Virus record (IMG/VR): IMGVR_UViG_3300026097_000876
Span: 124,001 to 188,000 of that record
Length of the DNA: 64,000 nucleotides
Strand: one strand, 5' to 3'
The translations under genes and the position numbers were made by a program. Below, piece after piece: positions 1 to 21,315 of the stretch. The notes under the pieces are model-generated. The model ran no database searches. It had not been told where the DNA came from and saw nothing but the letters and a program-made list of their open reading frames with translations. Position 1 is the first letter of the stretch. Each line of letters opens with the position of its first letter.

Positions 1-1284
1 GATTTTATCAAAGAGTGTGATGCTACAATCAAATTAGGAATTAAACATATAGGTTGGAATAAAGATCCTAAAAAATATTACATCGGTCCAATTGACGGAA
101 CACCGACTTCTAACGACAGAGCCGATATTATTTTTCAACATGCCTTAGGTTACAGAGACGAAAATTTATTACATATTTCAACAGAGCTTGGTTATAAAAT
201 TCATCATAATAAAAATAGTTTCGTTGAGACTGCTGGTAATCACGCATATCATTTTGATGCTCATAAAGTAGGAAAATACTTTAAAAAAGTTAGTAATACT
301 GTAAAACATATTGACAGCGAAGTAGAACATGTTATACTAGACAGTGAATCAGGTAGAGTAAAAGAATTAAAATTGTCAAATGATGAAATAGTCCAAGGCG
401 ATATGTTTATTGATGCAAGTGGCTTTCATCAAGTTTTAATGAAAGCTGTTGGAGGTAAATGGAAAAGTTATAAAGAAAATTTACCAGTTAATAGTGCATT
501 ACCGTTTTTACTTCCATATGAAGAAGATGAAGTTATTGAACCTGTTACAAATGCATGGGCACAAAAAAACGGTTGGTGTTGGCAAATTCCAACAAAAGAA
601 CGTCGAGGATGTGGATATGTATTTTGCGATGATTTTGTAACTCCTGATCAAGCACATGCTGAACTTGAGCAAACAATTGGTCGTAAAGTTGACCCAATTA
701 GATTATTAAAATTTGATAGCGGAAGACAGGAAAAATTGTGGGTTAAAAATGTATTGTCTATCGGATTGTGTGCTGCGTTTGCAGAGCCGTTAGAAGCAAC
801 AAGTATTCACACAACAATTATTCAGTTAAAACATTTTGTATTTGGTTGTTTAGGAGTTGATGTAGACGATACTTGTAATCCTGCACAAGTTGATAATTAC
901 AATCAACAAAATGGTCATTTATACGACAATATGAAAGACTTTCTTGTTGCGCACTATACGTGTGGCAGAAATGATTCTGAATTTTGGAAACATATCGACA
1001 GCGGTGCAACAATTACTCCGTTTGTACAATCAATACACGAGATCTGCAAGCACAGGATGCCTAACTCAACTTTATTCCCACGCCAAGAGGGAAGTGCCGG
1101 ATGGCCTTTATGGAGTTTTGTTCTTGCAGGTACAGGAAAACTAACAGATACAATTGCTAGACAAGAACTTAAATTTAATCATGATGAAATGTTAAGCGAT
1201 AGTGCATATCAATATCACACAAAAGAACATCACTCAATGAGTGAATCATTACCGGATAATACCAACTACATAAAAGGCATTTAA
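1..1284 (+). CDS. Flavin-dependent (tryptophan halogenase, PrnA-like) family protein, 5'-truncated by window edge
   Basis: Frame is open from base 1 (DFIKECDATIKLGIKHIGW..., with the ATxKxGI Lys motif), so the true start is upstream of the ORF-track start at 373. Also has WCWQIP (WxWxIP) and GLCAAFAEPLEATSI motifs. Confidence 0.85.
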   Translation, partial: DFIKECDATIKLGIKHIGWNKDPKKYYIGPIDGTPTSNDRADIIFQHALGYRDENLLHISTELGYKIHHNKNSFVETAGNHAYHFDAHKVGKYFKKVSNTVKHIDSEVEHVILDSESGRVKELKLSNDEIVQGDMFIDASGFHQVLMKAVGGKWKSYKENLPVNSALPFLLPYEEDEVIEPVTNAWAQKNGWCWQIPTKERRGCGYVFCDDFVTPDQAHAELEQTIGRKVDPIRLLKFDSGRQEKLWVKNVLSIGLCAAFAEPLEATSIHTTIIQLKHFVFGCLGVDVDDTCNPAQVDNYNQQNGHLYDNMKDFLVAHYTCGRNDSEFWKHIDSGATITPFVQSIHEICKHRMPNSTLFPRQEGSAGWPLWSFVLAGTGKLTDTIARQELKFNHDEMLSDSAYQYHTKEHHSMSESLPDNTNYIKGI

Positions 1285-2534
1285 TGATTAGAGTATATGG
1301 CGATATTATGCTGGACAAATGGATCATTGGCAATGCCAATCGAATTAGTCCAGAAGCACCTGTTCCTGTCTTGCACGAAACAGAGCAAAAACATTGTCCT
1401 GGTGGTGCTGGTAATATTGCAATTAATATTGCAAGCCTTAACGAAAATGTAGGAGTATACGGAACTATTGCTCCTGATTATGAAGGCAACTTACTTGCTG
1501 AATGTTTTAGAAATTATGAAAAAATTGCATTCAATGTTACTACAGACTCTAAAATTACTACTACTAAAAATAGACTTGTTGGTCAAGGTGGACAGCATAT
1601 TTTGCGCTGGGACAGAGAAGAAAAATATCAAAATTCAAATGCATTCAAAAAATTATTAGCAGATGTGCAATCACAAGATGTTGTTTGTGTAAGTGATTAT
1701 AATAAAGGAACAATTCAAAAAAATACAATTAGTGATTTGTTAGATAAAGGTTGCACTGTGTTAGTTGATCCTAAACAAGATGCTGAAACATATAGAGGTG
1801 CATTTTTAGTTAAGCCAAATATGAAGGAATATAATTCATGGTTTGGAGAGTTTAAAAAAGAAAACGCAATACTAAAACTTAAAGAGTATAATTGGACATA
1901 TCTTGTAGTTACAGACGGTGCTAATGGAATTCATGTACTAAAAGATGATTTAACTTATCGTCACTATCAAGAACCTGCACAAGAAGTAGCTGATGTTGTA
2001 GGAGCAGGTGACACCGTATTAGCAGTACTTGCATATTATATTGGTCAAGGTATTGACGTTTTCAAAGCATGCGAAATTGCTTGCTATGCTTCGGCAAGAT
2101 CAGTTGAACATCGAGGAATACACGTTATAACACACGACGATTTAAAACGTAAAGTTGTTTTTACAAACGGATGTTTTGATATATTGCATACTGGACATTT
2201 TCGACTTTTAGAGTTTGCTAAATCTAAAGGCATAAAATTAGTTGTTGGTATTAACAGTGATGCAAGTGTAAAAAGACTTAAAGGAAATAATCGTCCTGTT
2301 AATAATCAAGAAGTACGTAAAGAACAATTAGAAGCACTTCCGTGGGTAGACAATGTAGTAATTTTTGAAGAAGATACTCCAGAAAACATACTTAAAATTG
2401 TAAATCCAGACTTGATTATTAAGGGCGGAGACTATATAATAGAACAAGTTGTAGGTCATAAAAATTATCCTGTAGAAATATTTCCTACAATACAAGGAAG
2501 ATCAACAAGCAACATAATTGAGAATATAAAATGA
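1284..2534 (+). CDS. hldE: Bifunctional heptose-7-phosphate kinase / heptose-1-phosphate adenylyltransferase (HldE/RfaE)
   Basis: N-terminal PfkB-type kinase (GDIMLD..RISPEAPVPV, PGGAGN, DVVGAGDT) fused to a C-terminal nucleotidyltransferase (VFTNGCFDILHTGH, GINSDASVKRLKG, KGGDY). Confidence 0.92.
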   Translation: MIRVYGDIMLDKWIIGNANRISPEAPVPVLHETEQKHCPGGAGNIAINIASLNENVGVYGTIAPDYEGNLLAECFRNYEKIAFNVTTDSKITTTKNRLVGQGGQHILRWDREEKYQNSNAFKKLLADVQSQDVVCVSDYNKGTIQKNTISDLLDKGCTVLVDPKQDAETYRGAFLVKPNMKEYNSWFGEFKKENAILKLKEYNWTYLVVTDGANGIHVLKDDLTYRHYQEPAQEVADVVGAGDTVLAVLAYYIGQGIDVFKACEIACYASARSVEHRGIHVITHDDLKRKVVFTNGCFDILHTGHFRLLEFAKSKGIKLVVGINSDASVKRLKGNNRPVNNQEVRKEQLEALPWVDNVVIFEEDTPENILKIVNPDLIIKGGDYIIEQVVGHKNYPVEIFPTIQGRSTSNIIENIK

Positions 2535-3358
2535 AAATATTAGTAACTGGACACAACGGATTTATTGGAAGTCATATTTCTAATTATCTATTACACAATA
2601 ATCACGAAGTAGACGGATTTGATTACGTAGAAAACGTTATTCCTAATGTTGAACCATATGACTGGGTAATACATTGTGGAGCAATTTCTGATACTACAGA
2701 AAGAGATGTTGATAAAGTTTGGAAACACAATTACGAATTTACTATGCGACTATTACAAGTATGCGATCATCTCGGTACTAATATTCAATTAGCAAGTACG
2801 AGTGCTGTATACGGGTCAAACAAAAGTTTTAATGAAAATGATCCTGTATACCCACAAACTCCATATGCTTGGAGTAAATATCTTACTGATAAATTTTTAA
2901 AAGACAGTGGCATAAATGATTTTAATATGTTAGTGCAAAGTTTTAGATATTTTAACGTATACGGTCCAGGTGAAGGACATAAAAATGATCAAATGAGTTT
3001 GGTCAGTAAGTTTCAAAAACAAGCAATAGAAAATGGTGTAATTGAACTATTTGAAAATAGTGATCAATACGAAAGAGACTGTGTATGTGTGTACGATGTT
3101 GTTAGAATTCACGAGCAAATGATGAATCAAGATGTAAGTGGCATTTTTAACTTAGGAACCGGAAAAGCTCGTAATCTAGAATCTGTTGCACAAGTAATTG
3201 CTGATAAGTATGATGCTAAAATTAAATATATTGATATGCCAGAAAAATTAAAAGGTCAATATCAAGAATACACATGTGCAGATAACGCACTACTACATAA
3301 TACAATACCAATTAGACATTGGTTAACAATTGAGGAATATTTAAATGAATCCAACTAG
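2531..3358 (+). CDS. hldD: ADP-L-glycero-D-manno-heptose 6-epimerase-like extended SDR (HldD/RfaD)
   Basis: TGHNGFIGS Rossmann motif, HCGAISDTTE, ASTSAVYG, YAWSK (YxxxK), FRYFNVYGPGE. Start overlaps the hldE stop. Confidence 0.85.
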   Translation: MKILVTGHNGFIGSHISNYLLHNNHEVDGFDYVENVIPNVEPYDWVIHCGAISDTTERDVDKVWKHNYEFTMRLLQVCDHLGTNIQLASTSAVYGSNKSFNENDPVYPQTPYAWSKYLTDKFLKDSGINDFNMLVQSFRYFNVYGPGEGHKNDQMSLVSKFQKQAIENGVIELFENSDQYERDCVCVYDVVRIHEQMMNQDVSGIFNLGTGKARNLESVAQVIADKYDAKIKYIDMPEKLKGQYQEYTCADNALLHNTIPIRHWLTIEEYLNESN

Positions 3359-3740
3359 ATTAGAAGGCAAAGTTGAAAAAGGTTGGGGGTATGAACTTAT
3401 TTGGGCAACCAATGAAAAATACTGTGGTAAAATTATGGTATTTGAAAAACTTGGTTCTAAGTTTAGCATGCATTTTCATCAAGAAAAAGACGAAACATGG
3501 TTTGTTAACAATGGTAGATTTTTGTTAAAATGGATTGATACTAACACAGCCGAGTTGCATCAGCAAGAACTAACACAAGGAATGGTTTGGCGCAATCCTC
3601 CTTTACAGCCACATCAATTAATTTGCATGGAGGCAGGGAGTAGCATTACCGAAGTCAGTACACCGGATAGTGTAGAAGATAATTACCGTATCGGTAGAGG
3701 CGACAGCCAACTCTCTACAGAGGATAACGCACAGGCTTAG
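3345..3740 (+). CDS. Cupin-fold protein (sugar-phosphate isomerase-like)
   Basis: VEKGWGYELIW..N..YCGKI, SMHFHQEKDETW, PLQPHQL, EVSTPDSVEDNYR motifs; adjacent to heptose genes. Confidence 0.75.
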   Translation: MNPTRLEGKVEKGWGYELIWATNEKYCGKIMVFEKLGSKFSMHFHQEKDETWFVNNGRFLLKWIDTNTAELHQQELTQGMVWRNPPLQPHQLICMEAGSSITEVSTPDSVEDNYRIGRGDSQLSTEDNAQA

Positions 3741-6700
3741 GCCTGTGCTTCACCCCATTTAATAATAATATTAGCGTTTACCGGCTCACCTGACGTTTTA
3801 TAAACGTTTAGTGCTAGCACATCTGGGCCATTCGGGAAAGTACCTCTACCACCTAGTGTAGTGTTTGTAAGTTCTTTCAAGTTCTGTAGATCCAACGTAG
3901 ATCTTTCGCCGGGTTGTGCAATAAACGAGAATACCGTTTCTCCTGGCTGTGCATAAGGTGGTTGACTAAACTCGAAGTTAAATTCATCACCTGGCGAAAC
4001 TGTTCCGTTGAAAGAGTTATTAAAGTTAACTTTGTAATACTCGATGCCCCCTGAACTTTGATTACCGAATAGTAAAGGTCCTTCAATAACCGATACAGCC
4101 GAACCTGCTGGGAAACTAACATCGCCCTGATTGGTTGGATCACCATTTTCATCTCCGAGCTCAGTACCTGACCTTGCACCTGAGCTGTCCCATTCTGATT
4201 TTAAGAAAAATGCAAAGTTAGCATTGTTCAAATCTCCACCTTTTTGGAATGATTGAGTAGCTCCGTTGCCAGAATTACGATTAGATCTTTGTGAGAAATA
4301 AACCAAATATCTGCCATAGATTGTTTGGTCAACTACCTGCTGGATAGTAGTACCTGCGGGGAAAAATTCATTCCCGCCACCACTTGAAGATACTTCATCA
4401 CCAACTTTCAAATTAGCTGTTTCCCAACTGTTTTGGTCAAAGTATCCGTAGTTTCTGTTTGTTCTAAAGTTCCACCATGGCATTAACTGTGCTGATGTTG
4501 TAGCCTGAGACATAACTGCCGCTGTAGAATATGTTGCTGTATCACCACTGTTCCAATTAGTAGAACCGCCCGATGCTACCTGTGCAAAACTTGGCTGTCC
4601 ACCTTGTGCTAGTCCTGATAATCCTGTCCAACCAATATCACTTGGGTTGAGTGGATAGTTTTGCGGATTAAGAATGCCTTCAATAACGATACCGCCGTAA
4701 ATATTTGAATCATCTGTTGGATCCTGTCCATCTGATGTAATCTCTAGGCCCTGCATAAGTAACTGAGCTCTGTTTAACAGTTCTCTATCTCCTAGGTCTC
4801 CTACAATTGCATTGGATACACTAGGTGCTAGACGTAGCAAGAATGCTGTTTGTCTAGTTGTACTGATGTTCAAACCAGTTTCTGTGTATGAGAAAATGTA
4901 ACCGCGGTCATCATCAAATCCACCATCTGTAATAAACGCAGAACCCCAGTGACTAATTAACGGAGTAATTGTATTACTAATTAAAATAACACCTGTTCGT
5001 TGCTCATGTTGTACAGGATCGCCTGCACTATATTGTCTAGTTGATCCAGCTTGGAAGTTAGTTAGTGTAGTCCCTCTAGTACAACCGGTTAGTGTATTTG
5101 TTGTCTTATTATTTCCAGTAAACGAAATAATTTCATTATCAATATAAACTGTTCCAGAATCAGGGAAGAATTTAGATTCTACAAGAGGAATGGTTGTTTG
5201 AGTCGAATCCATTACAGATCTTAGTTTATCAACAGCTCCTTCGTTAGTAACTTCGTAACGTACTGGCAAGTTACCTGAACGCATAAACGCTTCTGTGTTT
5301 ACGTTTGAGTTACGCATTCTGTGTGCAAATACAAAGTTACCATCTGCACCACGTAGCATCCAATCAATGAAACCAGCACCGTACCATGAATATTGAATAC
5401 CAATCATTTGCATGTATCTAACGTCCATGTTGTATCCACTTGGACCAGTGCCATCGCATTTATCAAGATTCCATTCTTCTTGAAGGACTTTTTTATCAGA
5501 AACTAAATTAACTTTGGCGGATGCAATACTTGTTACACCCCTATAATCAGGAGTAACAGTTATTTGTGTTTGCGAATCTACATTAGATACTACGTGTGTC
5601 ATACCTTTGATAACAATTCTATCACCAGCAATTAGCTGGTCTCTAAATCTAGTGTTATTACCTATTACTAAGTTTGAATCTCGATCTACAGACACTGTGC
5701 CTGCAATTTGTTTTGTACTTGTACGTTGTGCTACTTGTACGTTAGTTCCGTCAAACTCCCAGTAAATTCCGTTTTGATCATCAAAAATACCTGAACGTAC
5801 AGTTGCTCCGTGCCATCCAACTACAGTCAGCTGAGCTGCAAATCCAAGCACAGCATTAGTAGATCCTAAGCGTCTTGTGCTTGAACATTTTAAAGTTCTT
5901 TCATCAACAATCTGTGTAACAGTGTATTCGCCGTTATAACCTTCTGTTTCTGCTCCAATTATTCGAATCAGTCCGCCAACTTGAGCACCGTGATCGTTAT
6001 CATCAGTAACAATAGTTATTACCGAACCAATTTCAGTTCCTGTAGATGTAATAGTTCTAACATCATAACTTGGAGCAAACAATGCACCAGTTGTATACAT
6101 AATACCTTTACCTGACTGGTAACGAATATACTTTTTACTTTGACGAATTGCTTGTGCACCGTGTTGCGGACCGCCTGTACCTAATTGTACACCGCCGTCG
6201 TATGGCCTGTGTATAAAGAAACTATCAGGTCGCATATAGACATTACCTTGAATTTTATCTTCTGTTGAATCTGATGGTAAAAATTCTACAATTGTGCCCG
6301 GTGCTCTTGCTTGATATCTAATACTTTTAGTAGTAGGTACTTGCGTTGCAATAAATGATCCAGAAGCTAACGCATGATTATTTGTTTCGGTTGATGAGTT
6401 AATATCAACAATAAACGTATCACCTGGTACAATTCCGTGCGCATACGGCCAAATTATTTCGATAGTTGCTAGTGCTTCAAAGTCGACACTAGATCCTGAA
6501 GTAATATCTGTAGTTGCAAAATCAGACAATGTAACAGCATTAACTAAATTTAATGTCCCACCACTAACTGCTGTTCCTGCAATAGTTATCGAATTTAATC
6601 CGCCGCTACCGTCAATATTAGATACAGTAATTGTTGCGTCATTTTCAGGAGATGTACCTCCCAAATCTGTTCCAGCAATTACAATTTCATTACCTGCTTG

Positions 6701-11727: not shown

Positions 11728-11730
11728 TCT

Positions 11731-12246: not shown

Positions 12247-12261
12247 TAGTGCTCCGTATAG

Positions 12262-12268
12262 TATTTAT
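12262..12268 (-). promoter_or_regulatory. Late promoter (ATAAATA)
   Basis: ATAAATA on the minus strand 16 nt upstream of the 12246 start; matches the T4 gp55 TATAAATA type. Confidence 0.65.
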
Positions 12269-12299
12269 CGTTTTACAAATATATATAGCACTAGTTATT

Positions 12300-13747: not shown

Positions 13748-15210
13748 ACCAACCTCCTTAATAAGTCTAACATCATCTTATGTGGAATGGCTCTAATACT
13801 ATCAAAATTAATTTTTTCTTGGCATTTTTGGTTTACATATTGCTGAACGTCTGATGGTAACGTATTATATTGAGATAATATATCTTTATTATTAAATAAT
13901 CCTAGTCCATGCATAACAATTGCATAATTATACTCATTAAACAATATTTTTTTAGTATGAGACGTTAGATCATCAGCAACTGGCATTCGATTTTCCCACA
14001 TTTTAAGATTTTTTTCTAGAGATTCTGGAATAGGAGTATCTGCTACAGCTCTCCAAAATGGTGTGTCTCTTCTTTTTGTTATATAATGTAGTACAATAAA
14101 GTCTCTAATATTGTTCATAATAGAATCAACTTCTACATTATATCGATCAATAGATTCTTGATTATAATTTACTAATCGCTGTGCAAGCAAAAAACTTTGA
14201 TTAATACTAGTTCCAATCGAACTTGCTTCCAACGGTTCAACAAAGCTAGCACTCAGCCCAATTGCACAAACATTATTAATCCATGGGCGATCTAAAGCAC
14301 CAGGATCGAATTTGATGTGTTTAGCAACAGTTACATCGTAACCAAGGTATTCTTCAACTTCTTTTTGCGCTTCCTCGGCTGTAATATAATCACTATCGAA
14401 AATATATCCGTTCCCTTTTCGGTCGTATACTGGAATTCTGAACATCCAACCCGAATTCATAGCTTTAGCTAGTGTCCACATAGGAGTTTCTTCCTCCTCA
14501 GGAGTAGGAAAAACAATAGCTTCCTTCATTTTGAGGTATTTACTGTAGCTATTCCATGTAGCACCCAATTTATTAATTAGTAGACGTTTAAATCCTGTGC
14601 AATCAATATAAAAATCATAATGATAGTCTTGCTTTTCACCTTTTAAAGTTTTAATTTCGCCTTTTAATACATTAACATCTACAATTTCATCATCATATAC
14701 ATTACACCCTTTAGATATTGCAAAATTTGTTAAAAAATCGTTTAACTTGTTAGTGTTAAAATGATATTGACTTACGCCTGTATCATTTGGGCGTTCTTCC
14801 ATAAATTTATTGAAAGGTGTAAGATTTTTCCAAAGATAATCTCCAGTTAAGTCTCGAGGATCAACGTTTTCACCAATTAGTTTGGCATAACACATTGGCA
14901 TTCCGAGATGTTCTCCTACAAACGGATCGTGTACATTTTGTAGATAAGGTTTTTCGCTCCAGTCTTCAAACATAATACCTGCTTTGTAGGTTGCATCACA
15001 CTCTTTTACAAGAGTTCCTGCTGGAATCCCTACATAATCCATAAATGCAGACCAGTGTTCTGTGGATCCTTCGCCTACACCGATTGTTCCTATTTTCGTA
15101 GACCTAATTACATCTACAGTAAAGTTAGGAAAACTTGTTTTTAATATTAATGCGCTTACAAAGCCTGCGGTTCCACCGCCTACCACTGCTATTTTCATAT
15201 TTTTATTCAT
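13744..15210 (-). CDS. Flavin-dependent (tryptophan halogenase, PrnA-like) family protein
   Basis: VVGGGTAG FAD motif, IGVGEGST, DATYKAGI (Lys motif), FYIDCTGF, WMFRIP, GLSASFVEPLEASSI. Confidence 0.88.
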   Translation of the reverse strand: MNKNMKIAVVGGGTAGFVSALILKTSFPNFTVDVIRSTKIGTIGVGEGSTEHWSAFMDYVGIPAGTLVKECDATYKAGIMFEDWSEKPYLQNVHDPFVGEHLGMPMCYAKLIGENVDPRDLTGDYLWKNLTPFNKFMEERPNDTGVSQYHFNTNKLNDFLTNFAISKGCNVYDDEIVDVNVLKGEIKTLKGEKQDYHYDFYIDCTGFKRLLINKLGATWNSYSKYLKMKEAIVFPTPEEEETPMWTLAKAMNSGWMFRIPVYDRKGNGYIFDSDYITAEEAQKEVEEYLGYDVTVAKHIKFDPGALDRPWINNVCAIGLSASFVEPLEASSIGTSINQSFLLAQRLVNYNQESIDRYNVEVDSIMNNIRDFIVLHYITKRRDTPFWRAVADTPIPESLEKNLKMWENRMPVADDLTSHTKKILFNEYNYAIVMHGLGLFNNKDILSQYNTLPSDVQQYVNQKCQEKINFDSIRAIPHKMMLDLLRRLV

Positions 15211-15778
15211 CTAAGGTATACCATCCAGTTACAATATACTTAACGCCTTTATAAATAGGATTACCTCGATGTGGATGTGTAAATGATGTTGGAAAAATAC
15301 AAAGTTTGCCTGGTTCAGGTTTACATTTGACTCCTTGATATAAAAATTCTGTTTCGCCGCCTTCGTCAACAGCATTTAAGTAAACTGTATAAGCAAGTAT
15401 GCGTGATGCTGAACTCAAATCAGCATTTTCACAATGCCAGGCATGATACCCTTGATGAGGTTTAGTTTTTTGTACACTCATTCCTTTAGGAGAGTGTTGC
15501 ATTACGTTTCCTAAACTTTCATATTTGCTGCGATACTTGTCTGTGTAAATTTTATTAAGAGTAGAATAGAAAAAATGACACAAGTCTTCATCAGCATGAT
15601 ATCTCGAATTGTGATTTGCCCAATCCATCATTACACGTTCGTCTTGATTTTTTGCACTGCTTTCTAAATTTGTAAGTTGGCTAGCAGACATTTCTTCAAA
15701 ACGTTTAATTACTTGCTTACACCAATCAATTGGAAAAGCATTTGAATATTCTTCGATTCCGTTAAAATTGCCTTCCAT
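15203..15778 (-). CDS. 2OG-Fe(II) oxygenase (prolyl-4-hydroxylase-like)
   Basis: GYHAWHCE (HxE), YLN..DEGGETEF, FPTSFTHPHRGNP, KYIVTGW. Confidence 0.85.
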   Translation of the reverse strand: MEGNFNGIEEYSNAFPIDWCKQVIKRFEEMSASQLTNLESSAKNQDERVMMDWANHNSRYHADEDLCHFFYSTLNKIYTDKYRSKYESLGNVMQHSPKGMSVQKTKPHQGYHAWHCENADLSSASRILAYTVYLNAVDEGGETEFLYQGVKCKPEPGKLCIFPTSFTHPHRGNPIYKGVKYIVTGWYTLDE

Positions 15779-15786
15779 AATGACTC

Positions 15787-16488
15787 CTAAATAAAAAATT
15801 GTTGATTAATACGGTAGTTGTCGTTTACAAACATATGAGGTTTAACATACGCTGTATGAAGAACTGCCTGATTATACAAAACCATTCTATTAAAAACCAT
15901 CGGCACCATGCCAATCATTTCCCAATCATATGTTGTATCTGTAATATATTCTCTAACAGGATGTTTGCCTTTTACATCTAGCGTATGTGTTATTGAAGTA
16001 TCGTCATAATACGTCTTTCCGCCAAATTTATAAAAACTAGTCCCACCGTTGCACTCGTTAGCCGTATTAAGATAAATCGTTGAAGCTAAATTTCTTCCAC
16101 TAGTATTGTCCATATGAGGACATATAGGAGGTAGATTCTCGCTCTGCATTACATTTACCATAAATGTTGCATTTGTAAAACTACGTATCATATATCCCGG
16201 ATCATATTCTTTCATAATATCTGGAAAATATGTTCTTGCTAATTGATCATAAATCCAAGACATATTAGAAAGTTCATAAAACGCATTAATTCTTAATGCT
16301 GGATTGTTTCCTCTAATGCGCTTGTTTGTTGATGCAGGAATGTTCAAAGCTAGTTCTCGAACCATGTGAGGATTTTTGTAAAAATTATCAACTGAGATAA
16401 CAGTTACATCCCCAAATTTATGAACATATGGTTGATAGTCTGGATTAATTGCAAATACTTCGTCTTCGTCAATTGTTTTTTTATGCAT
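15787..16488 (-). CDS. 2OG-Fe(II) oxygenase-like protein (DUF6445-like)
   Basis: DNFYKNP..VRELA, PHMD (HxD), IYLN...GGTSFY, FNRMVLY...LH. Confidence 0.65.
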   Translation of the reverse strand: MHKKTIDEDEVFAINPDYQPYVHKFGDVTVISVDNFYKNPHMVRELALNIPASTNKRIRGNNPALRINAFYELSNMSWIYDQLARTYFPDIMKEYDPGYMIRSFTNATFMVNVMQSENLPPICPHMDNTSGRNLASTIYLNTANECNGGTSFYKFGGKTYYDDTSITHTLDVKGKHPVREYITDTTYDWEMIGMVPMVFNRMVLYNQAVLHTAYVKPHMFVNDNYRINQQFFI

Positions 16489-17083
16489 CTGTTTTCTCTG
16501 TTAGTATAAAGTTAGCACTAATCGTTGCTCGTATGTCTTGACTTTTATTGTGTGTTACGTAATGTTCCATTACACTAGGAAAATAAATGATATCTCCTTC
16601 AACTAGCGGGGGAGTTACTCTATTATTATATTTAAAAGGCTGTGTAGTTAAACTAGGAAGGTCTGATTGATGGAAAAAATCATATGCATTTTTATAAAAA
16701 ACAAAATTTCCACTATTAGGAGGTACTTTCATCATATATGCACAGCTAATAATACTAGGACCTGCGTGATTATGAACTTCTTGGTGTTGTCCTTGAGAAT
16801 ACCTATTTAACCAACATTCGATTCGATAATCAATTGGAAGATCAATATTAAAAATTTCAAGATATTCGTTTAAACCGTTAATTGCAGACCTAATAAACTT
16901 TTGATATGGCAAGCTATCAGCATCTCGATTTCCAAAGGTAGTGTCAACGTTGCTATACCAAGTATCGACTTTATTAAAATATTCATCAGACTCTAACACT
17001 TGGTTAAAGTCTGTTTGAACATCTTGATGATTGTTTAGTTGTGTCTTATAGACAGGAATTGAGAATAAATCATAGTGTGTCAT
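16481..17083 (-). CDS. 2OG-Fe(II) oxygenase (TIGR02466-like)
   Basis: LFSIPVY, WLNRY..G.HQEVHNH (HxH), EGDIIYFPS..EHYV, RATISANF. Confidence 0.8.
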   Translation of the reverse strand: MTHYDLFSIPVYKTQLNNHQDVQTDFNQVLESDEYFNKVDTWYSNVDTTFGNRDADSLPYQKFIRSAINGLNEYLEIFNIDLPIDYRIECWLNRYSQGQHQEVHNHAGPSIISCAYMMKVPPNSGNFVFYKNAYDFFHQSDLPSLTTQPFKYNNRVTPPLVEGDIIYFPSVMEHYVTHNKSQDIRATISANFILTEKTDA

Positions 17084-17085
17084 TA

Positions 17086-18909
17086 CTAGTTTTTCATTTC
17101 AATTAGTTTACCATATTCGGGCAAGAAACAGTACTCCATTTCACTATTATACAATGTCCTAACAGCGTCGTCAAGTGTTTCCACTAAAGGTTCGCCGCCT
17201 AGATTAAACGATGTATTAAAGATAATCGGAACACCTGTTTGCTCATAGAACGTTTTAATTAAATTATAATAGTGTTTGTTTTGATTTTCAGTAACAGTTT
17301 GAATTCGACATGTGCCGTCAACATGAATAATACTAGGAATTTTTTCTTCAATACCTGGTTGACAGTTCATTGCATACATCATATGCGGAGATTCTTTTAA
17401 TCCTCGCATGTCAAACCATTCGTGTGCATGTTCTAATAAAATAGACCCAGCAAATGGACGGAAGTATTCTCTACGCTTGACTTTGTTTACATAATCTTTA
17501 CCATCTTCTGCAGTAGGGTCAAACAAAATACTTCTGTTACCTAATGCCCTAGGGCCGTTTTCACTTTGCCCTTGAAACATAGTTACAATATTTTTGTTTT
17601 TAATTAAATCAACTACAGTGTTATAATCAGCATCGACAATACTAGCACCATACTTATTTGCTGTTTCTTCGATCTGTTCAGCTGTGTAAGAATATTCAAA
17701 TCCTTCATATATAGTTTCTGCATACGATCTTACTTTTTTATCTTTAGTAGTTTGATGATAAATTAACATTGCGGCGCCGATTGCTGTTCCTGCATCGCTC
17801 GATACTGGCTCTACATATAAATTAATGCCTTCGTCGTTTAGTTTATCAAGATACCAATAGTTGGCTACACAGTTTAATGCGTATCCGCCACTAAGAACTA
17901 CATTTTTATTGCCACTCATTTCCACTGCTTTAAAAATAAGATTTAAAACTTCTTGTTGAGATTGTTCTTGAACAGCGTATGCAAGATCTCTTCTATTTTC
18001 AAGTGTTGTTAAGTCTATATTACTATTTTGCACATCTTGTGAAGTTTCAAGAAACTCATATTTGCCTTCGTTAACTAATGCAGCATTAGGATAAGTAGGA
18101 ATAATTACGTTTCTGTCACTAGTTCTCCATTTTCCGCCATTACCGTCTGTATAAATTGGAGGAATATTATTGTTTGGTTTTCCATATGGTGCTAATCCCA
18201 TTGTTTTGCCAGCTTCAATTGGTTGAAATCCGCAATACTGAGTTACAGCCTCGTATGCTTTAGTAATTCCTGCACTATCATCAAGCACCAGTTCGTGATA
18301 TCCTTCTTCACCTTCTCGATCTGAAGGTATAAATGGCACATGTGCTCCAGGAAACGGTCCATTCGCTCCTTGATGCTTATACAATGTTTTTAAGTTATCA
18401 GGATAATTACAATTAAAAATACTTTCGCATTCCCATGTCATAAATTCTTCTTGGAATTGTCCTGCATTAATATTCATAGGAATAAAAGTACCAGCGCCAT
18501 CAACTACGACAGCTGTTGCTGTTTCAAATCCTGAACGATAAAATGCACAAGCAGCATGAAGTTTATGATGAATGTGACTAAGGTCTATAACTTGTCTATG
18601 ATCAAAATTAGGACCGTATGCACTTTCTGATCGATCAATTAACCCTAATTTTCTTGCTAATCCAGTGTACATGTCTCCACCGCTGAAGTCGATTCTGCTA
18701 GAGTCTGATAGCGGTTGTGTATGTGCCACAACTAGATAATCAAGTTTATCGGTATAATCTAAAAATTTAATCATTGCGGCAAGTGGGCCGCCGTCGTATT
18801 TTTTACGAGTAAGGCGTTCTTCTTCAATTGCAAATACAATTTCACCGTCTTTCAATAAAACAGCACCGCCGTTGTGTCCTCTTGTAATTGCTCCAATCCA
18901 CTGCGTCAT
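17086..18909 (-). CDS. Carbamoyltransferase (NodU/CmcH/TobZ family)
   Basis: GHNGGAVL..DG....AIEEERLTRKK, HHKLHAACAF, VVDGAG, AGKTMGLAPYG, SGGYALNCVAN, DAGTAIGAA, GPRALGNRSIL, RE.FRPFA, HVDGTCRIQTV, NTSFNL.GEPLV. Confidence 0.93.
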   Translation of the reverse strand: MTQWIGAITRGHNGGAVLLKDGEIVFAIEEERLTRKKYDGGPLAAMIKFLDYTDKLDYLVVAHTQPLSDSSRIDFSGGDMYTGLARKLGLIDRSESAYGPNFDHRQVIDLSHIHHKLHAACAFYRSGFETATAVVVDGAGTFIPMNINAGQFQEEFMTWECESIFNCNYPDNLKTLYKHQGANGPFPGAHVPFIPSDREGEEGYHELVLDDSAGITKAYEAVTQYCGFQPIEAGKTMGLAPYGKPNNNIPPIYTDGNGGKWRTSDRNVIIPTYPNAALVNEGKYEFLETSQDVQNSNIDLTTLENRRDLAYAVQEQSQQEVLNLIFKAVEMSGNKNVVLSGGYALNCVANYWYLDKLNDEGINLYVEPVSSDAGTAIGAAMLIYHQTTKDKKVRSYAETIYEGFEYSYTAEQIEETANKYGASIVDADYNTVVDLIKNKNIVTMFQGQSENGPRALGNRSILFDPTAEDGKDYVNKVKRREYFRPFAGSILLEHAHEWFDMRGLKESPHMMYAMNCQPGIEEKIPSIIHVDGTCRIQTVTENQNKHYYNLIKTFYEQTGVPIIFNTSFNLGGEPLVETLDDAVRTLYNSEMEYCFLPEYGKLIEMKN

Positions 18910-19640
18910 ACTTTATTTTCCTTTATGTATTTTAGAATTTTACTTCTATATTTTGCATTTTCAAATGCCTTATAACATTCTGCTAATGGTGTAGGTAAAA
19001 ATCTTTTGGCTTTTAGATTTTTGTAACCTAAACATTGCATTACTGGTCCTGTTTTAGACTCAAACAACTTTGCACTATCAAATCTAATTAACTTAATTTT
19101 TTCTGTAGTATTAAATTTAAAGTAACATAATGTATCGCCCCTTTTTATGTCTATTTCAGATACGTTATCTTTAAACTTAAATGCAGGACGTACAGGTCTA
19201 ATCCAACTTGATATATTATATGTACCAGCAATGCCCATTGTCGCTGACGAAAACTGAGTTTGTTCGTAGTAAGGTGGTAATTGTGTCATACTTAATGGAG
19301 TTTCACTAAAAAATAAAAAATTAGGGTGCTCTATTTGATGTATATTTTCTTTATTTGGTTCGCCAACATAATTAATTAAAAAATTAGGATCAATATCATA
19401 ATTAGACATTACTTCTTTTTTTACATGGTCAAATTTTATATGAAAATCTATAGGACTTTTTGCACTAAATGTGTTTTTAGTTTCATCAACTATAGCGGGA
19501 CATAAACTTGCACCTAACCCAAAAAATTCTCGTGCATTAAGATCCTTATAGACTGTCTCTGGTTCAAAGTATTTCAATTCTGAAACAAACTCCTGACCCT
19601 CTGGGACGTTTATTACCGGAGACCAGTATACTTTGATCAT
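18906..19640 (-). CDS. Hypothetical protein (244 aa)
   Basis: Intact ORF with 4-nt overlaps to both neighbours; no family recognised. Confidence 0.6.
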   Translation of the reverse strand: MIKVYWSPVINVPEGQEFVSELKYFEPETVYKDLNAREFFGLGASLCPAIVDETKNTFSAKSPIDFHIKFDHVKKEVMSNYDIDPNFLINYVGEPNKENIHQIEHPNFLFFSETPLSMTQLPPYYEQTQFSSATMGIAGTYNISSWIRPVRPAFKFKDNVSEIDIKRGDTLCYFKFNTTEKIKLIRFDSAKLFESKTGPVMQCLGYKNLKAKRFLPTPLAECYKAFENAKYRSKILKYIKENKV

Positions 19641-20266
19641 TGGCTATTCTCTACTTCATATAAAAAATCACACACAAACACTCTACGTTCATCAATTGTA
19701 GGATATGTGCCATGCCAAACTCTTCCGTCCATTATAACTACTTCTCCTGCTTTTGGAGTGTGTGTTTGAAAATTTACTTGGTAATCAGGTAACGGTTGTA
19801 ATGTTATTAGATTCCCTGCCATTGGATATTCGATAGACGTTGAGACAGAATTTAAAAACAAGACTGCTGTTAACTGTCGATCATTAACTGTGTCAGTTGG
19901 ACAATTTGCTGTCATAGTATGACAGTGAAATCCAGAATACGAATTCTGTCCATATTTTACACCCCAGGCTTTTCTAAATTCTTTAATACATATTGGAAGA
20001 TTTTCTTGTACGCTGTCTGTAATAAATTTTTGTAAACTTAATGTTGCGTCAATATCTTTTGGGTAATTCATATTATCTTTATGATAAAGATATGCATTAC
20101 CTAGTTGCTTCGATGTTTCGTCGTAATTTGTAAAAATATTTTCAAACTTTTTGTAGTCAGGATAAAACAGCTCGTCAATTATCCAAGTTTCTAGTGTAGT
20201 TTTTCCTGTTTTTTGAGGCTCTATACGTTTTTCCCACAAATTGTTTAAAAAGTCTTCAGTAATCAA
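19637..20266 (-). CDS. Putative 2OG-Fe(II) oxygenase
   Basis: AWGVKY..NSYSGFHCH (HxH), TAVLFLN, GEVVIMDGRVWHGTYP, RRVFVCDF jelly-roll pattern. Confidence 0.65.
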   Translation of the reverse strand: MITEDFLNNLWEKRIEPQKTGKTTLETWIIDELFYPDYKKFENIFTNYDETSKQLGNAYLYHKDNMNYPKDIDATLSLQKFITDSVQENLPICIKEFRKAWGVKYGQNSYSGFHCHTMTANCPTDTVNDRQLTAVLFLNSVSTSIEYPMAGNLITLQPLPDYQVNFQTHTPKAGEVVIMDGRVWHGTYPTIDERRVFVCDFLYEVENSQ

Positions 20267-21315
20267 CTGCCGGTTCTTCCTAAAATTTGTGTAGGTTGAG
20301 TAGTCGAACTACTTGGAGAATGTACTACTCCGTGTGTTGGACAAACTTCTCCTTCGGTCGATGCTTTAAAATTTCCTGTATAGGATCTAGGCTTTCCTAG
20401 TCTTTTACGCACACTTTGGATAATGTCTTTAAAACTATTATCATCTAGTTCCATTACTTCGTCATTAAACCGTTCAATTTCTTCTTCCATTGTAAGTCTA
20501 ATAGGACTGAACTTACGCTTACCTTCGCCTAAGTCAATAATATCAAAATCAGAAGAACTAGGATAAGAAATATTAATAGGATATGTACTTCCGATAACAC
20601 TAGTACATGTTGTACCTAATGCTTTAGCCATGTGCTGTCCTAAACTATCGCACCCTATAAAATGGTCTGCAATTTGTATAACACTTGACCAAACTCTTAC
20701 ATCTGATATTTGCGGAACAGCAATTGGGATTGTTGTGTTTTCTTCTATTACAACTGGAAATTCGCTCATTACAATTACAGCATAATCATTACGTAAATCT
20801 TTACAAATACGTATCACATCATTAAGGTGAAAACTTCTACTAGTTCCATCAATTACAAAGTCTCCCATATTTTCAGCTGTTCGTCCAAAAGGCTGAAATA
20901 CAACTACTTTATCCTTACCTGTTACTGCTTTTACTTCTTCAACAACTTTATAACCATGAACAAGCTCGTGCTTATTCATATAAATTTTTGGATCTCCTAC
21001 TTCTCGTAATCCTTTATTGTTAATTGCAATATCAAATGCTTGTGCAAGGCTACATTTTTGATTATAATATTCCCAAACTCTATAAGGTTCTGGCGTAATA
21101 CAGTCTCTATCTTTAATATAATCTTTAAATAAATTTTTATGCCAATTATCAAAAGCCATTTCGTGTAAAAATGGATGCCCTTTATAAAAATCCATTCCAC
21201 CTTCACAAATAATAATAAAGTCTTGATCTTCTTCGTATAATTTTTCAAAAGCAGGAATAGAACAAACTACTCTACCGGCTCCACCGTTTATAAAATATGC
21301 TTTTTTTCTAGACAA
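20263..21315 (-). CDS. GT9-like (heptosyltransferase-type) glycosyltransferase
   Basis: GGAGRVVCSIPA (cf. GGxGD), VVVFQPFG, and IQIADHFIGCDSLGQHMAKALG..TSVIGST (cf. GT9 ADLFIGNDSG.MHLA.ALG). TTG start with an AGGAG RBS. Confidence 0.65.
   Translation of the reverse strand: MSRKKAYFINGGAGRVVCSIPAFEKLYEEDQDFIIICEGGMDFYKGHPFLHEMAFDNWHKNLFKDYIKDRDCITPEPYRVWEYYNQKCSLAQAFDIAINNKGLREVGDPKIYMNKHELVHGYKVVEEVKAVTGKDKVVVFQPFGRTAENMGDFVIDGTSRSFHLNDVIRICKDLRNDYAVIVMSEFPVVIEENTTIPIAVPQISDVRVWSSVIQIADHFIGCDSLGQHMAKALGTTCTSVIGSTYPINISYPSSSDFDIIDLGEGKRKFSPIRLTMEEEIERFNDEVMELDDNSFKDIIQSVRKRLGKPRSYTGNFKASTEGEVCPTHGVVHSPSSSTTQPTQILGRTGS

What the first reader, a model, noticed from the sequence alone, without database searches (positions are those of the whole stretch)
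1284..21315. Near-complete ADP-heptose pathway split over two convergent operons, with a GT9-like transferase
hldE and hldD (+ strand) and gmhB plus a GT9-like transferase (- strand, late operon) are separated by a block of structural genes. Together they could make ADP-L-glycero-manno-heptose and transfer it. GmhA is not in the window. The GT and gmhB are under a perfect TATAAATA late promoter, which suggests heptosylation of virion proteins, or late remodelling of host LPS, rather than DNA modification.
Basis: partly seen in the sequence, partly recalled or inferred. Interest (0 to 1): 0.6.

Follow-up and report, generated by a model that had tools for sequence, protein, structure and literature searches.

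The report
Late phage heptose-glycosylation gene module
A giant T4-related phage carries, inside its tail-gene region and under a late promoter, enzymes to make an activated seven-carbon sugar plus a previously unnamed transferase and a carbamoyl-adding enzyme. The set most likely decorates the phage's own tail proteins rather than host LPS, but this is not proven.

Summary
The window holds intact HldE-like (1284..2534), HldD-like (2531..3358) and GmhB-like (12300..12875) genes, and a 350-aa protein (20263..21315) whose predicted fold matches only GT9 heptosyltransferases best. A conserved TATAAATA lies 24 nt upstream of it.

No SIS-type GmhA exists in the 262 kb held, nor in 25 related records, one of them complete.

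- The virus is a jumbo T4-related phage of the PA5oct/Phosso kind, not shown to be a cyanophage.
- The module is shared with cyanomyoviruses such as P-SSM2 and S-SSM7, where it is known as "LPS genes". In some relatives all parts form one co-directional cluster, so the split here is one arrangement of a linked module.
- The transferase is almost always followed by a NodU-type carbamoyltransferase.
- The cyanophage gene annotated "phosphoheptose isomerase" is really a small HAD phosphatase that replaces GmhB.
- A PMI-like cupin is the only conserved candidate for the missing isomerase.
- The transferase has Arg where WaaC and TibC have the catalytic Asp (weak alignment).

Best reading: a late module that puts (carbamoyl-)heptose on virion tail proteins. 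Host-envelope remodelling remains a live rival. This is a new variant of a known kind, of moderate interest.

The parts
1..1284 (+). Flavin-dependent 'tryptophan halogenase'-like gene, cut at its 5' end by the window. It belongs to the + strand string that starts upstream with a gp15-like tail-sheath stabiliser, a NUDIX gene and another halogenase-like gene.
   Evidence: PF04820 E 5.5e-73. Upstream genes identified in L006.
1284..2534 (+). HldE-like fused heptose-7-phosphate kinase / heptose-1-phosphate adenylyltransferase, 416 aa.
   Evidence: PfkB plus CTP_transf_like domains. NF008454 354 bits (cut-off 521), TIGR02198 and TIGR02199. Motifs RISPEAP, GAGD 240-243 and HTGH 302-305. dN/dS 0.24 against a relative.
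2531..3358 (+). HldD-like ADP-glyceromanno-heptose 6-epimerase, a 275-aa SDR.
   Evidence: TIGR02197 220 bits (cut-off 274.6). 33% identity to E. coli RfaD, E 5e-44, with YxxxK and FRYFNVYGPxEGHK conserved. Orthologue of cyanophage T4-GC 308.
3345..3740 (+). Small metal-binding cupin (131 aa), PMI-like. It is the candidate replacement for the missing sedoheptulose-7-phosphate isomerase, or else a nucleotide-sugar epimerase.
   Evidence: Cupin_2 / Lyx_isomer / WbuC hits. The orthologue in L064 hits the GMP_PMI cupin domain. 38% identical to P-SSM2 T4-GC 307. Always found with HldE/HldD. The fold search does not discriminate between functions. JGI names for the family: mannose-6-phosphate isomerase-like cupin.
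3737..9676 (-). 1979-aa virion structural protein, last gene of the minus-strand string. Its stop overlaps the cupin's stop.
   Evidence: phrog_5838 E 6e-254.
9683..10234 (-). 183-aa protein of unknown function within the structural block.
   Evidence: No family hit.
10243..11727 (-). gp9/gp10-like baseplate wedge / tail-fibre connector, 494 aa.
   Evidence: PF07880. phrog_677 E 1.5e-84.
11731..12246 (-). 171-aa protein of unknown function. A TATAAATA at 11790-11797 lies inside it, 63 nt before the gp9/10-like start.
12262..12269 (-). GATAAATA late-promoter-like motif just downstream of gmhB. It marks the end of the GT-to-gmhB unit.
12300..12875 (-). GmhB-like HAD-IIIA heptose-1,7-bisphosphate 7-phosphatase. 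Likely start ATG 12875 or 12863.
   Evidence: NF006506 133 bits (cut-off 178), TIGR00213, TIGR01662. Motifs DRDGT, TNQ, GDKITD. Present in 51 of 80 GT loci. dN/dS 0.03-0.06.
12884..13747 (-). 287-aa protein with faint methyltransferase similarity.
   Evidence: PF01189 E 0.004, below cut-off.
13744..15210 (-). Flavin-dependent halogenase-like protein, 488 aa.
   Evidence: PF04820 E 6.5e-95.
15203..15778 (-). 2OG-Fe(II) oxygenase (prolyl-hydroxylase-type family), 191 aa.
   Evidence: PF13640 E 8e-13.
15787..16488 (-). DUF6445 protein, 233 aa.
   Evidence: PF20043 E 7e-17.
16481..17083 (-). 2OG-Fe(II) oxygenase-like protein, 200 aa.
   Evidence: PF13759 E 1.8e-15. TIGR02466.
17086..18909 (-). NodU/CmcH-type O-carbamoyltransferase, 607 aa. 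It is the near-constant downstream partner of the transferase.
   Evidence: PF16861 plus PF02543. NodU E 4e-38. Found in 76 of 80 loci. 67% identical to S-SSM7 gp121.
18906..19640 (-). 244-aa protein of unknown function.
   Evidence: phrog_17480 only.
19637..20266 (-). 2OG-Fe(II) oxygenase-like protein (209 aa, weak hit), lying between the transferase and the carbamoyltransferase.
   Evidence: PF13640 E 1.7e-4, below cut-off. Present in 41 of 80 loci.
20263..21315 (-). GT9-fold glycosyltransferase-like protein, 350 aa (phrog_8954; cyanophage T4-GC 302, annotated 'hypothetical').
   Evidence: Fold search returns GT9 structures at the top. The C-terminal motif D223-S224-x3-H228 aligns with WaaC D261-T262-x3-H266. 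G14-R15 lies where WaaC has G12-D13 (weak). 3885 homologues, none with a Pfam domain. Sibling Atlas clusters are auto-named heptosyltransferase. dN/dS 0.05-0.08.
21339..21346 (-). TATAAATA, a T4-type late-promoter motif 24 nt upstream of the transferase start.
21385..21414 (-). Terminator-like hairpin (13-bp stem plus T run) closing the upstream tail-fibre genes.
21438..22226 (-). 262-aa protein with a tail-fibre-assembly-chaperone-like C-terminus. It is the near-constant upstream neighbour of the transferase.
   Evidence: PF16778 (weak), phrog_9740, phrog_8746. Found in 73 of 80 loci.
61542..62381 (-). gp55-like late sigma factor, the factor expected to read TATAAATA promoters.
   Evidence: phrog_12791 E 1.7e-81, phrog_234.

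Best explanation
The region is one functional module, physically split in this phage. The module makes a nucleotide-activated heptose and transfers it late in infection.

Inferred pathway:
1. Heptose-7-phosphate comes either from the host's GmhA or from the phage's PMI-like cupin acting on sedoheptulose-7-phosphate.
2. The HldE kinase domain phosphorylates it at C1.
3. The GmhB-like HAD removes the 7-phosphate.
4. The HldE nucleotidyltransferase domain adenylylates it.
5. [quoted passage not shown]
6. The GT9-fold protein, first gene of a ten-gene late unit, transfers the heptose to an acceptor.
7. The carbamoyltransferase that almost always follows the transferase then O-carbamoylates the sugar. 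The model is 7-O-carbamoyl-heptose in Pseudomonas LPS core. The 2OG oxygenases may prepare or further modify the acceptor.

The most likely acceptors are the phage's own tail or tail-fibre proteins made at the same time.

Shown here: gene identities, intact catalytic motifs, the GT9 fold, conserved linkage, the late-promoter motif, and purifying selection.
Inferred: the nucleotide and sugar identity, the donor used by the transferase, the carbamoylation target, and above all the acceptor.
For: Enzyme identities and motifs:
-.

GT9 fold and donor-site motif:
-.

Linkage:
- In 80 IMG/VR loci the transferase is followed by the carbamoyltransferase in 76, and preceded by the tail-fibre-assembly-like p262 in 73.
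- In L057, L064-67, L070, L081 and L085, GT, carbT, HldE, HldD, cupin and GmhB lie co-directionally within about 9 kb. In L058 they lie within about 7 kb, but the four heptose genes are on the opposite strand.
- An rfaE-domain-II-like gene is found in 18 of 23 transferase-bearing records, and in all 11 of those that are 52 kb or longer.
- The same cassette occurs in P-SSM2, S-SSM7 and S-CAM1 next to tail-fibre genes.

The function is maintained:
- GmhB-type and EcbF-type HAD phosphatases are mutually exclusive in these clusters (10 against 5, never both).
- dN/dS is 0.03-0.35.

Late timing:
- TATAAATA is placed and conserved.
- A gp55-like sigma factor is in the window.
- The + strand genes follow a gp15-like structural gene.

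Virion acceptor:
- In the N4-like Vibrio phage SBP1 the homologue sits between a tail-fibre and a tail protein, with no sugar-nucleotide genes nearby.
- TibC, a protein O-heptosyltransferase that uses ADP-heptose, is among the top structural matches (PMC4358343).
- Cyanobacterial LPS lacks Kdo and heptose, so the canonical GT9 acceptor is absent in the hosts of the cyanophage carriers (PMC4390846).

Carbamoyl-heptose precedent:
- WapO/PA5005 (PMC8005017).
Against: - No experiment or transcript data bear on this virus. Only one DNA run holds the stretch, and no RNA run does.
- All three pathway enzymes score below NCBIfam equivalog cut-offs, so the exact sugar or nucleotide could differ.
- The transferase fails the Pfam GT9 threshold.
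- At the weakly aligned position of the catalytic Asp of WaaC and TibC it has an invariant Arg. Its chemistry or acceptor may therefore be unusual, or it may not be a heptosyltransferase at all.
- No GmhA was found.
- The cupin's role is a guess, because its fold matches many cupin functions.
- Gene neighbourhood alone cannot tell a protein acceptor from a lipid or polysaccharide acceptor.
- In divergent relatives a sigma-70-like promoter overlaps the late motif, so expression may not be purely late everywhere.
Confidence: 0.5

Rival explanations
1. Host envelope remodelling. The module makes ADP-heptose and the transferase adds (carbamoyl-)heptose to host LPS core, O-antigen or capsule. This could block superinfection, or keep progeny from sticking to debris. 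It is the classical 'phage LPS genes' reading.
For: - GT9 enzymes are mostly LPS-core heptosyltransferases.
- The genome has a second island of LPS-type genes: GT8 x2, GT25 x2, a sulfotransferase, a TylF-like methyltransferase and a second GT9-like gene.
- The capsid and portal proteins place this virus among jumbo phages of Proteobacteria, whose LPS has heptose and which would supply GmhA.
- Carbamoyl-heptose is an LPS-core feature in Pseudomonas (PMC8005017).
- Sullivan et al. proposed this role for P-SSM2 (PMC1079782).
Against: - The late promoter and the position inside the tail module leave little time for a surface change to matter in a lytic cycle.
- The same cassette sits in cyanophages whose hosts' LPS lacks Kdo and heptose (PMC4390846).
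- The N4-like phage homologue lies between tail genes.
- The catalytic Asp used on Kdo/heptose acceptors is apparently replaced.
Confidence: 0.22
2. A different sugar or donor. The diverged kinase/nucleotidyltransferase, phosphatase, epimerase and cupin make another nucleotide sugar, such as a modified or 6-deoxy heptose or a non-ADP nucleotide. Alternatively, the GT9-fold protein uses an unrelated donor, so that 'ADP-L,D-heptose to heptosylation' is wrong in detail.
For: - All scores are below equivalog cut-offs.
- The cupin resembles CapF/WbuC-type nucleotide-sugar enzymes as much as it resembles isomerases.
- Several oxygenases, halogenase-like proteins and a methyltransferase-like gene share the unit.
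- HldE alleles are swapped between close relatives: 39% identity where HldD is 72%.
Against: - The best hits for every enzyme are the heptose-specific models, with E from 1e-39 to 1e-106.
- HldE- and HldD-specific motifs are kept.
- The residues WaaC uses at its donor site (D261, T262, H266) align with invariant residues of the transferase.
Confidence: 0.15
3. A soluble product. The ADP-heptose, or a carbamoylated or halogenated heptose derivative, is itself the end product. It could be a signal, an antibiotic-like metabolite or an anti-defence molecule, with the 'transferase' acting on a small molecule.
For: - The unit looks like a natural-product cluster: carbamoyltransferase, three halogenase-like genes, several 2OG oxygenases and a methyltransferase-like gene.
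- A NUDIX gene lies upstream of hldE.
Against: - The transferase is tightly and widely coupled to tail-fibre and assembly genes.
- No transporter, carrier or scaffold-synthesis genes were seen in the unit.
- The timing is late.
Confidence: 0.08
4. DNA modification, or non-functional 'stuffer' DNA.
For: - Phage nucleotide-sugar pathways can serve DNA glycosylation (established knowledge for T-even phages).
- Sullivan et al. raised the stuffer-DNA idea (PMC3037559).
Against: - No ThyA/hydroxymethylase-family gene in the 262 kb held.
- The promoter is late.
- Against stuffer DNA: dN/dS is far below 1, motifs are intact, there are thousands of homologues, and a phosphatase is always retained.
Confidence: 0.03

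Closest known systems
[quoted passage not shown]
   Same: Fused HldE in the same domain order, a GmhB-type HAD-IIIA phosphatase and an HldD-type SDR. The catalytic motifs are kept, and HldD is 33% identical to E. coli RfaD.
   Different: - There is no SIS-type GmhA anywhere in the family.
- All scores are below equivalog cut-offs.
- GmhB lacks the Cys/His zinc loop that I recall from E. coli GmhB (memory, not tested).
- HldD is about 35 residues shorter.
- The genes are phage-borne, late-expressed and embedded in tail genes.
Cyanomyovirus 'LPS gene' cassette, T4-GC 302-308 of P-SSM2, S-SSM7, S-CAM1 (PMC1079782, PMC3037559)
   Same: Orthologues of T4-GC 302 (transferase, 45-58% identity), 303 (carbamoyltransferase, 46-67%), 304+305 (nucleotidyltransferase and kinase), 307 (cupin, 38%) and 308 (epimerase, 37-40%). 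The position next to tail-fibre genes is the same.
   Different: - Here kinase and nucleotidyltransferase are fused in the bacterial order; in cyanophages they are split in the reverse order.
- Here the phosphatase is GmhB-type. Cyanophages carry a small EcbF/BcbF-type HAD (T4-GC 306) that records wrongly call 'phosphoheptose isomerase'.
- Here the module is split by a structural block.
- The carrier is a jumbo PA5oct/Phosso-like phage.
GT9 LPS heptosyltransferases WaaC / WaaF (PDB 2GT1, 2H1H, 1PSW)
   Same: GT-B fold with these as top structural matches. The C-terminal D-[ST]-x3-H-x-A-x-A-x-G motif is in register with WaaC D261/T262/H266.
   Different: - Below the Pfam PF01075 threshold (12.2 bits against 22).
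- An invariant G-R lies where WaaC has G12-D13, the catalytic base. The alignment is weak but consistent across the family, including the Vibrio-phage homologues.
- There is a conserved C-terminal tail with a CPTHGVVH motif.
- The context is tail genes, not a core-LPS operon.
Bacterial autotransporter heptosyltransferases TibC / AAH (PMC4358343)
   Same: They use ADP-heptose to O-glycosylate proteins. TibC is among the top structural matches. This is the precedent for protein heptosylation by a GT9-like fold.
   Different: - TibC has a catalytic Asp110 and forms an iron-containing dodecamer, features not seen or not tested here.
- Its substrates are autotransporter adhesins encoded next to it. 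Here the neighbours are phage tail proteins.
Pseudomonas core-LPS carbamoyltransferase WapO (PA5005) with WaaC/WaaF (PMC8005017)
   Same: Heptosyltransferases and a carbamoyltransferase encoded together. The product there is 7-O-carbamoyl-L,D-heptose.
   Different: Relatedness of the phage carbamoyltransferase to WapO was not tested. Its best NCBIfam hit is NodU, far below cut-off. The acceptor context also differs.

Membership tests
ADP-heptose pathway: HldE | PfkB kinase domain followed by a cytidylyltransferase-like domain, with GAGD and HxGH catalytic motifs | tested here: met
ADP-heptose pathway: HldE | Score above the NCBIfam equivalog cut-off (NF008454, 521 bits) | tested here: not met
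   354 bits
ADP-heptose pathway: GmhB | HAD-IIIA phosphatase with motifs I-IV, and GmhB models as best hits | tested here: met
   TIGR01662 above cut-off. DRDGT, TNQ and GDKITD present. The equivalog NF006506 scores 133 bits, below its cut-off of 178.
ADP-heptose pathway: HldD | Extended SDR with YxxxK and the EGHK second-base motif; equivalog TIGR02197 cut-off 274.6 bits | tested here: inconclusive
   The motifs are present and the protein is 33% identical to RfaD. The score of 220 bits is below the cut-off.
ADP-heptose pathway: GmhA | SIS-domain sedoheptulose-7-phosphate isomerase | tested here: not met
   No PF13580, PF01380 or TIGR00441 match in the 262 kb held. No PF13580 match in 25 related records, one of them 100% complete.
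ADP-heptose pathway | [quoted passage not shown] | not testable with these tools
   Needs enzymology or LC-MS
CAZy GT9 / Pfam PF01075 | Pfam gathering threshold (22 bits) | tested here: not met
   12.2 bits, E 0.012. No hit. In one sibling Atlas cluster, 22% of members do carry PF01075.
CAZy GT9 / Pfam PF01075 | GT-B fold closest to solved GT9 enzymes | tested here: met
   3tov, TibC, WaaF and WaaC fill ranks 1-28, with E 9e-9 to 7e-6 and TM 0.43-0.59
CAZy GT9 / Pfam PF01075 | C-terminal donor-site motif (WaaC D261, T262, H266) | tested here: met
   Ungapped alignment of D223, S224 and H228. These residues are invariant in 25 homologues.
CAZy GT9 / Pfam PF01075 | N-terminal catalytic Asp (WaaC D13, TibC D110) | tested here: inconclusive
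   hhalign places G14-R15 on G12-D13, but the probability is below 1%. The same GGxGR is found in Vibrio-phage homologues. No residue-level structural superposition was available.
CAZy GT9 / Pfam PF01075 | Uses ADP-heptose as donor | not testable with these tools
   Inferred only from linkage
BAHT protein heptosyltransferases (TibC/AAH) | Dodecameric, iron-binding, encoded beside an autotransporter substrate | not tested
   Only fold similarity was seen. The neighbours are phage tail genes, not autotransporters.
T4-type late promoter | TATAAATA shortly upstream of the gene, a gp55-type sigma factor in the genome, and positional enrichment | tested here: met
T4-type late promoter | Mapped late transcript start | not testable with these tools
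   No RNA run holds the sequence
Cyanomyovirus T4-GC 302-308 cassette | Orthologues of T4-GC 302, 303, 304, 305, 307 and 308 | tested here: met
   tblastn E 1e-15 to 0
Cyanomyovirus T4-GC 302-308 cassette | T4-GC 306 (small HAD, annotated 'phosphoheptose isomerase') | tested here: not met
   No match in the genome. A GmhB-type HAD takes its place.

The most novel reading that the evidence does not exclude
Phages of at least three lineages (jumbo PA5oct-like, cyanomyoviruses, N4-like) share an undescribed GT9-fold family that has Arg in place of the catalytic Asp and O-heptosylates tail or tail-fibre proteins. In the large phages this enzyme is fed by a self-contained five-step ADP-heptose pathway. 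In that pathway a PMI-like cupin, not a SIS enzyme, isomerises sedoheptulose-7-phosphate, and the transferred heptose is then O-carbamoylated. This would be the first virion heptosylation system and a new type of phosphoheptose isomerase.
Probability: 0.2. Interest if true: 0.8.

Novelty: new variant of a known kind. Interest (0 to 1): 0.55.

Why it matters
The 'LPS gene clusters' of large marine phages have been unexplained since 2005; one paper even asked whether they are stuffer DNA.

The analysis here gives them a concrete, testable shape:
- a maintained nucleotide-heptose pathway;
- a dedicated GT9-fold transferase family with thousands of metagenomic members, all annotated hypothetical;
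- an obligatory carbamoyltransferase partner;
- late expression among tail genes.

If the acceptor is the virion, this would extend phage virion glycosylation to heptose. That bears on host recognition, resistance to proteases and environmental stability of abundant ocean phages.

If the cupin is the isomerase, it would be a non-homologous replacement for GmhA.

The work also corrects a propagated annotation: the 'phosphoheptose isomerase' of P-SSM2, S-SSM7 and others is a HAD phosphatase.

Tried and rejected
- Megablast of the 21 kb against phage records found only a 94-bp match, so no close sequenced relative is in that collection.
- A profile search of the transferase family against PDB sequences gave only a weak, probably spurious sirtuin-5 match (E 0.023). 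No GT9 appeared. The fold search was needed.
- hhalign of the family against WaaC was not significant. I use its N-terminal register only as a weak lead.
- Profile and fold searches of the cupin hit many cupin functions about equally: KdgF, quercetinase, lyxose isomerase, CapF, cPGI and oxalate decarboxylase. They cannot decide isomerase against epimerase.
- I first assumed a cyanophage. There is no psbA/psbD in the 262 kb, and the capsid and portal are closest to jumbo phages of Proteobacteria, so I dropped that assumption. The host remains unknown.
- No tRNA genes in the window.
- The sequencing-run search found one DNA run (possibly the source, labelled soil metagenome) and no RNA run. Read laying was therefore not used, and there is no expression evidence.
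- One call failed on a frame error and was corrected.
- The sigma-70 and terminator scans were at chance level overall. Only the hairpin at 21385-21414 is convincing.

Full report
**1. What is there**

On the + strand:
- a halogenase-like gene, cut by the window edge;
- a fused HldE-like gene (1284..2534; PfkB plus cytidylyltransferase-like; HldE model E 9e-106);
- an HldD-like epimerase (2531..3358; TIGR02197 E 4e-65);
- a 131-aa cupin (3345..3740).

Converging on them, on the - strand:
- a 1979-aa virion protein, a 183-aa protein, a gp9/gp10-like baseplate protein and a 171-aa protein;
- then, reading upstream, ten genes:
  - a GmhB-like HAD (12300..12875);
  - a methyltransferase-like gene;
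  - a halogenase-like gene;
  - a 2OG oxygenase;
  - a DUF6445 protein;
  - a second 2OG oxygenase;
  - a NodU-type carbamoyltransferase (17086..18909);
  - a 244-aa unknown;
  - a weak 2OG-like gene;
  - the 350-aa protein (20263..21315).

Catalytic motifs are intact:
- HldE: RISPEAP, GAGD, HTGH.
- GmhB: DRDGT, TNQ, GDKITD.
- HldD: GxxGxxG, YxxxK, EGHK. It is 33% identical to E. coli RfaD.

All three score below NCBI's equivalog cut-offs, so they are diverged members, not textbook copies.

**2. The transferase**

Pfam gives nothing, and NCBIfam only a 36-residue match to heptosyltransferases III/RfaQ.

An AlphaFold model built on 25 homologues (pLDDT 77, pTM 0.80) has a two-Rossmann GT-B fold. 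Its best PDB matches are exclusively GT9: Veillonella GT9 3tov (E 9e-9), TibC, WaaF and WaaC.

The segment IGCDSLGQHMAKALG aligns without gaps to WaaC 258-272. This puts invariant D223, S224 and H228 on D261, T262 and H266.

At the N-terminus the invariant NGGAGR aligns, weakly, so that R15 sits where WaaC has the catalytic D13. The same GGxGR is kept in distant Vibrio-phage homologues.

ESM-Atlas sibling clusters are viral and auto-named heptosyltransferase. One has PF01075 in 22% of its members.

So 'GT9-like' is right at the fold and donor-site level. The protein belongs to a separate family (phrog_8954; 3885 metagenomic homologues, none with a Pfam domain). That family probably has altered acceptor chemistry.

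**3. The promoter**

TATAAATA lies at 21339-21346 on the - strand. It is 24 nt before the TTG start, preceded by a 13-bp hairpin plus T-run and followed by AGGAG.

The motif is not over-represented in the window, but it is sharply placed. Nine of 15 NATAAATA sites lie 15-75 nt upstream of same-strand starts, a zone that covers 2.3% of positions (P about 8e-12). These sites include those before the large fibre genes.

A gp55-like late sigma factor is in the window.

The motif survives in 47 of 58 distinct upstream regions of relatives, amid diverged flanks.

Between 21346 and gmhB there is no further NATAAATA on that strand and no convincing terminator. The next late motif (12262-12269) follows gmhB directly. 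GT to gmhB is therefore plausibly one ten-gene late unit.

The + strand genes follow a gp15-like tail-sheath stabiliser and a NUDIX gene. Their promoter was not identified.

**4. Who carries it**

I first assumed a cyanophage, because the cassette's best matches are in S-SSM7, S-CAM1, P-SSM2 and similar phages. That assumption did not hold.
- The 262-kb record (CheckV 73% complete) has no psbA/psbD.
- Its portal is 45-49% identical, and its major capsid protein 66-71% identical, to jumbo phages of Proteobacteria: Phosso, Atu_ph07, PA5oct, Vibrio 2.275.O and XaC1.

The host is unknown. The cassette has evidently moved between phage families.

**5. Comparative evidence for one module**

P-SSM2 and S-SSM7 carry, next to tail-fibre genes, T4-GC 302 (this transferase, annotated hypothetical), 303 (carbamoyltransferase), 304/305 (nucleotidyltransferase and kinase), 306, 307 (cupin) and 308 (epimerase). 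The literature calls these 'LPS genes' of unknown function (PMC1079782, PMC3037559, PMC7378029).

In 80 IMG/VR loci:
- the transferase is followed by the carbamoyltransferase in 76;
- it is preceded by a tail-fibre-assembly-like protein in 73;
- in the more diverged loci GT, carbT, HldE, HldD, cupin and GmhB sit within about 9 kb. They are co-directional in L057, L064-67, L070, L081 and L085. In L058 the heptose genes are on the opposite strand.

The split in this window is thus one arrangement of a linked module.

An rfaE-domain-II-like gene occurs in 18 of 23 transferase-bearing records, and in all 11 that are 52 kb or longer.

dN/dS is 0.03-0.35 for all tested genes, with dS saturated. That argues against stuffer DNA.

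**6. The missing isomerase and a corrected annotation**

No SIS/GmhA match exists in the genome held. None exists in 25 related records, including one complete 246.5-kb genome.

The cyanophage gene annotated 'phosphoheptose isomerase' (T4-GC 306) is in fact a small HAD phosphatase. It hits TIGR01689 (EcbF/BcbF) and PDB 9iqw at E 1e-10, and has a DxDGT motif.
- It is absent here.
- GmhB-type HADs are absent from cultured cyanophages.
- The two phosphatase types are mutually exclusive across loci: 10 against 5, never both.

This looks like non-orthologous displacement, and it implies that the phosphatase step is needed.

The only other constant member is the cupin, and it is PMI-like:
- its L064 orthologue matches the GMP_PMI cupin domain;
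- JGI names for the family read 'mannose-6-phosphate isomerase-like';
- it has an HxH...E...H metal site.

Converting sedoheptulose-7-phosphate to D-glycero-D-manno-heptose-7-phosphate is the seven-carbon analogue of the PMI reaction. The cupin is therefore a reasonable candidate, at roughly one in three. Sequence and fold cannot separate this role from a nucleotide-sugar epimerase role.

Elsewhere in the genome a conserved fusion joins an rfaE-domain-II-like nucleotidyltransferase to a PMI cupin. It shows that such pairs work together. That cupin is not a close relative of this one.

**7. The acceptor**

For virion proteins:
- the late unit lies inside the tail module;
- the transferase is constantly adjacent to a tail-fibre-assembly-like gene;
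- the N4-like Vibrio phage SBP1 homologue lies between a tail-fibre and a tail protein, with no sugar genes;
- TibC provides a precedent for protein heptosylation (PMC4358343);
- cyanobacterial LPS lacks Kdo and heptose (PMC4390846).

For host envelope:
- GT9 enzymes have an LPS pedigree;
- the genome has a second, LPS-type glycan island;
- the host is likely a proteobacterium.

Against DNA:
- the timing is late;
- no hydroxymethylase-family gene was found.

I put the virion reading ahead, but nothing here shows the acceptor.

The invariable carbamoyltransferase suggests that the final product is an O-carbamoyl-heptose, as on HepII of Pseudomonas core LPS (PMC8005017).

**8. Verdict**

This is a new variant of a known kind: the phage 'LPS/heptose' cassette, now with its transferase, phosphatase and candidate isomerase assigned, and carried by a different phage lineage.

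Noticed in passing
window 22259..24792 (-): Three tandem paralogues of 278-279 aa, very rich in Gly (18-20%) and Cys, with repeated CC, CxC and Trp motifs (for example CCYWCVPDG, NWAKCC). Local GC is higher (0.44). They lie just upstream of the transferase unit and are conserved there in 68 of 80 relatives (phrog_4205, unknown function). Three flavin 'halogenase'-like genes sit nearby and show faint N-terminal similarity to protein-Trp-modifying flavoenzymes (LodB, QhpG). That raises the idea of protein cross-linking, which was not tested.
   Followed up: partly
G000:C1 about 89,000-100,000 (L005:7000-17700), outside the window: A second glycan island on the minus strand: GT8 x2, GT25 x2, a 253-aa GT9-like protein, a sulfotransferase, a TylF-like O-methyltransferase and DUF6165.
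   Followed up: partly
L005:10481-11251 (-), that is G000:C1 92481-93251: A 256-aa fusion of an rfaE-domain-II-like nucleotidyltransferase with a mannose-6-phosphate-isomerase-type cupin. Open frames of the same size (259-267 aa) recur in five related records.
   Followed up: partly
P-SSM2 PSSM2_311 (L003:13312-13656) and S-SSM7 SSSM7_130 (L004:19055-19390): The public annotation 'phosphoheptose isomerase' is wrong. These 111-114-aa proteins are small HAD phosphatases of the EcbF/BcbF capsule-biosynthesis type (PDB 9iqw E 1e-10; TIGR01689).
   Followed up: yes
L006:9763-10311 (+), that is G000:C1 121763-122311, just upstream of the window: A NUDIX hydrolase gene sits between a gp15-like tail-sheath stabiliser and the two halogenase-like genes that precede hldE. 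It could act on ADP-sugars.
   Followed up: no
L057-L072, L077, L081, L085: 30-70 nt upstream of the transferase start: In the diverged relatives a sigma-70-like promoter (CTTGCA/CTTGTA, 17 nt, TGTTATAAT) directly follows the NATAAATA motif. The module may also be read by host RNA polymerase there.
   Followed up: no
L091 (G023:C1:36001-46000) compared with window 1284..3740: In a close relative HldD (72%) and the cupin (82%) are conserved, but HldE is only 39% identical. The HldE gene has been swapped for another allele within the same cassette.
   Followed up: no
window 3737..3740: The stop codons of the convergent cupin gene (+) and the 1979-aa structural gene (-) overlap by 4 nt. No terminator lies between the two transcription units.
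   Followed up: no
whole record G000: The virus is a jumbo T4-related phage: major capsid protein 66-71% identical to Phosso, PA5oct and Vibrio 2.275.O; at least 262 kb held, CheckV 73% complete. It has no psbA/psbD, yet it shares this cassette with cyanomyoviruses at 45-67% identity. The only sequencing run holding the stretch is labelled a soil metagenome.
   Followed up: partly
window 20263..20400 (C-terminal about 40 residues of the transferase): A low-confidence tail carries a motif conserved across close relatives (VCPTHGVVH ... QILGRTG, with invariant C325). It is absent from the cyanophage and Vibrio-phage versions. It may be a docking peptide.
   Followed up: no
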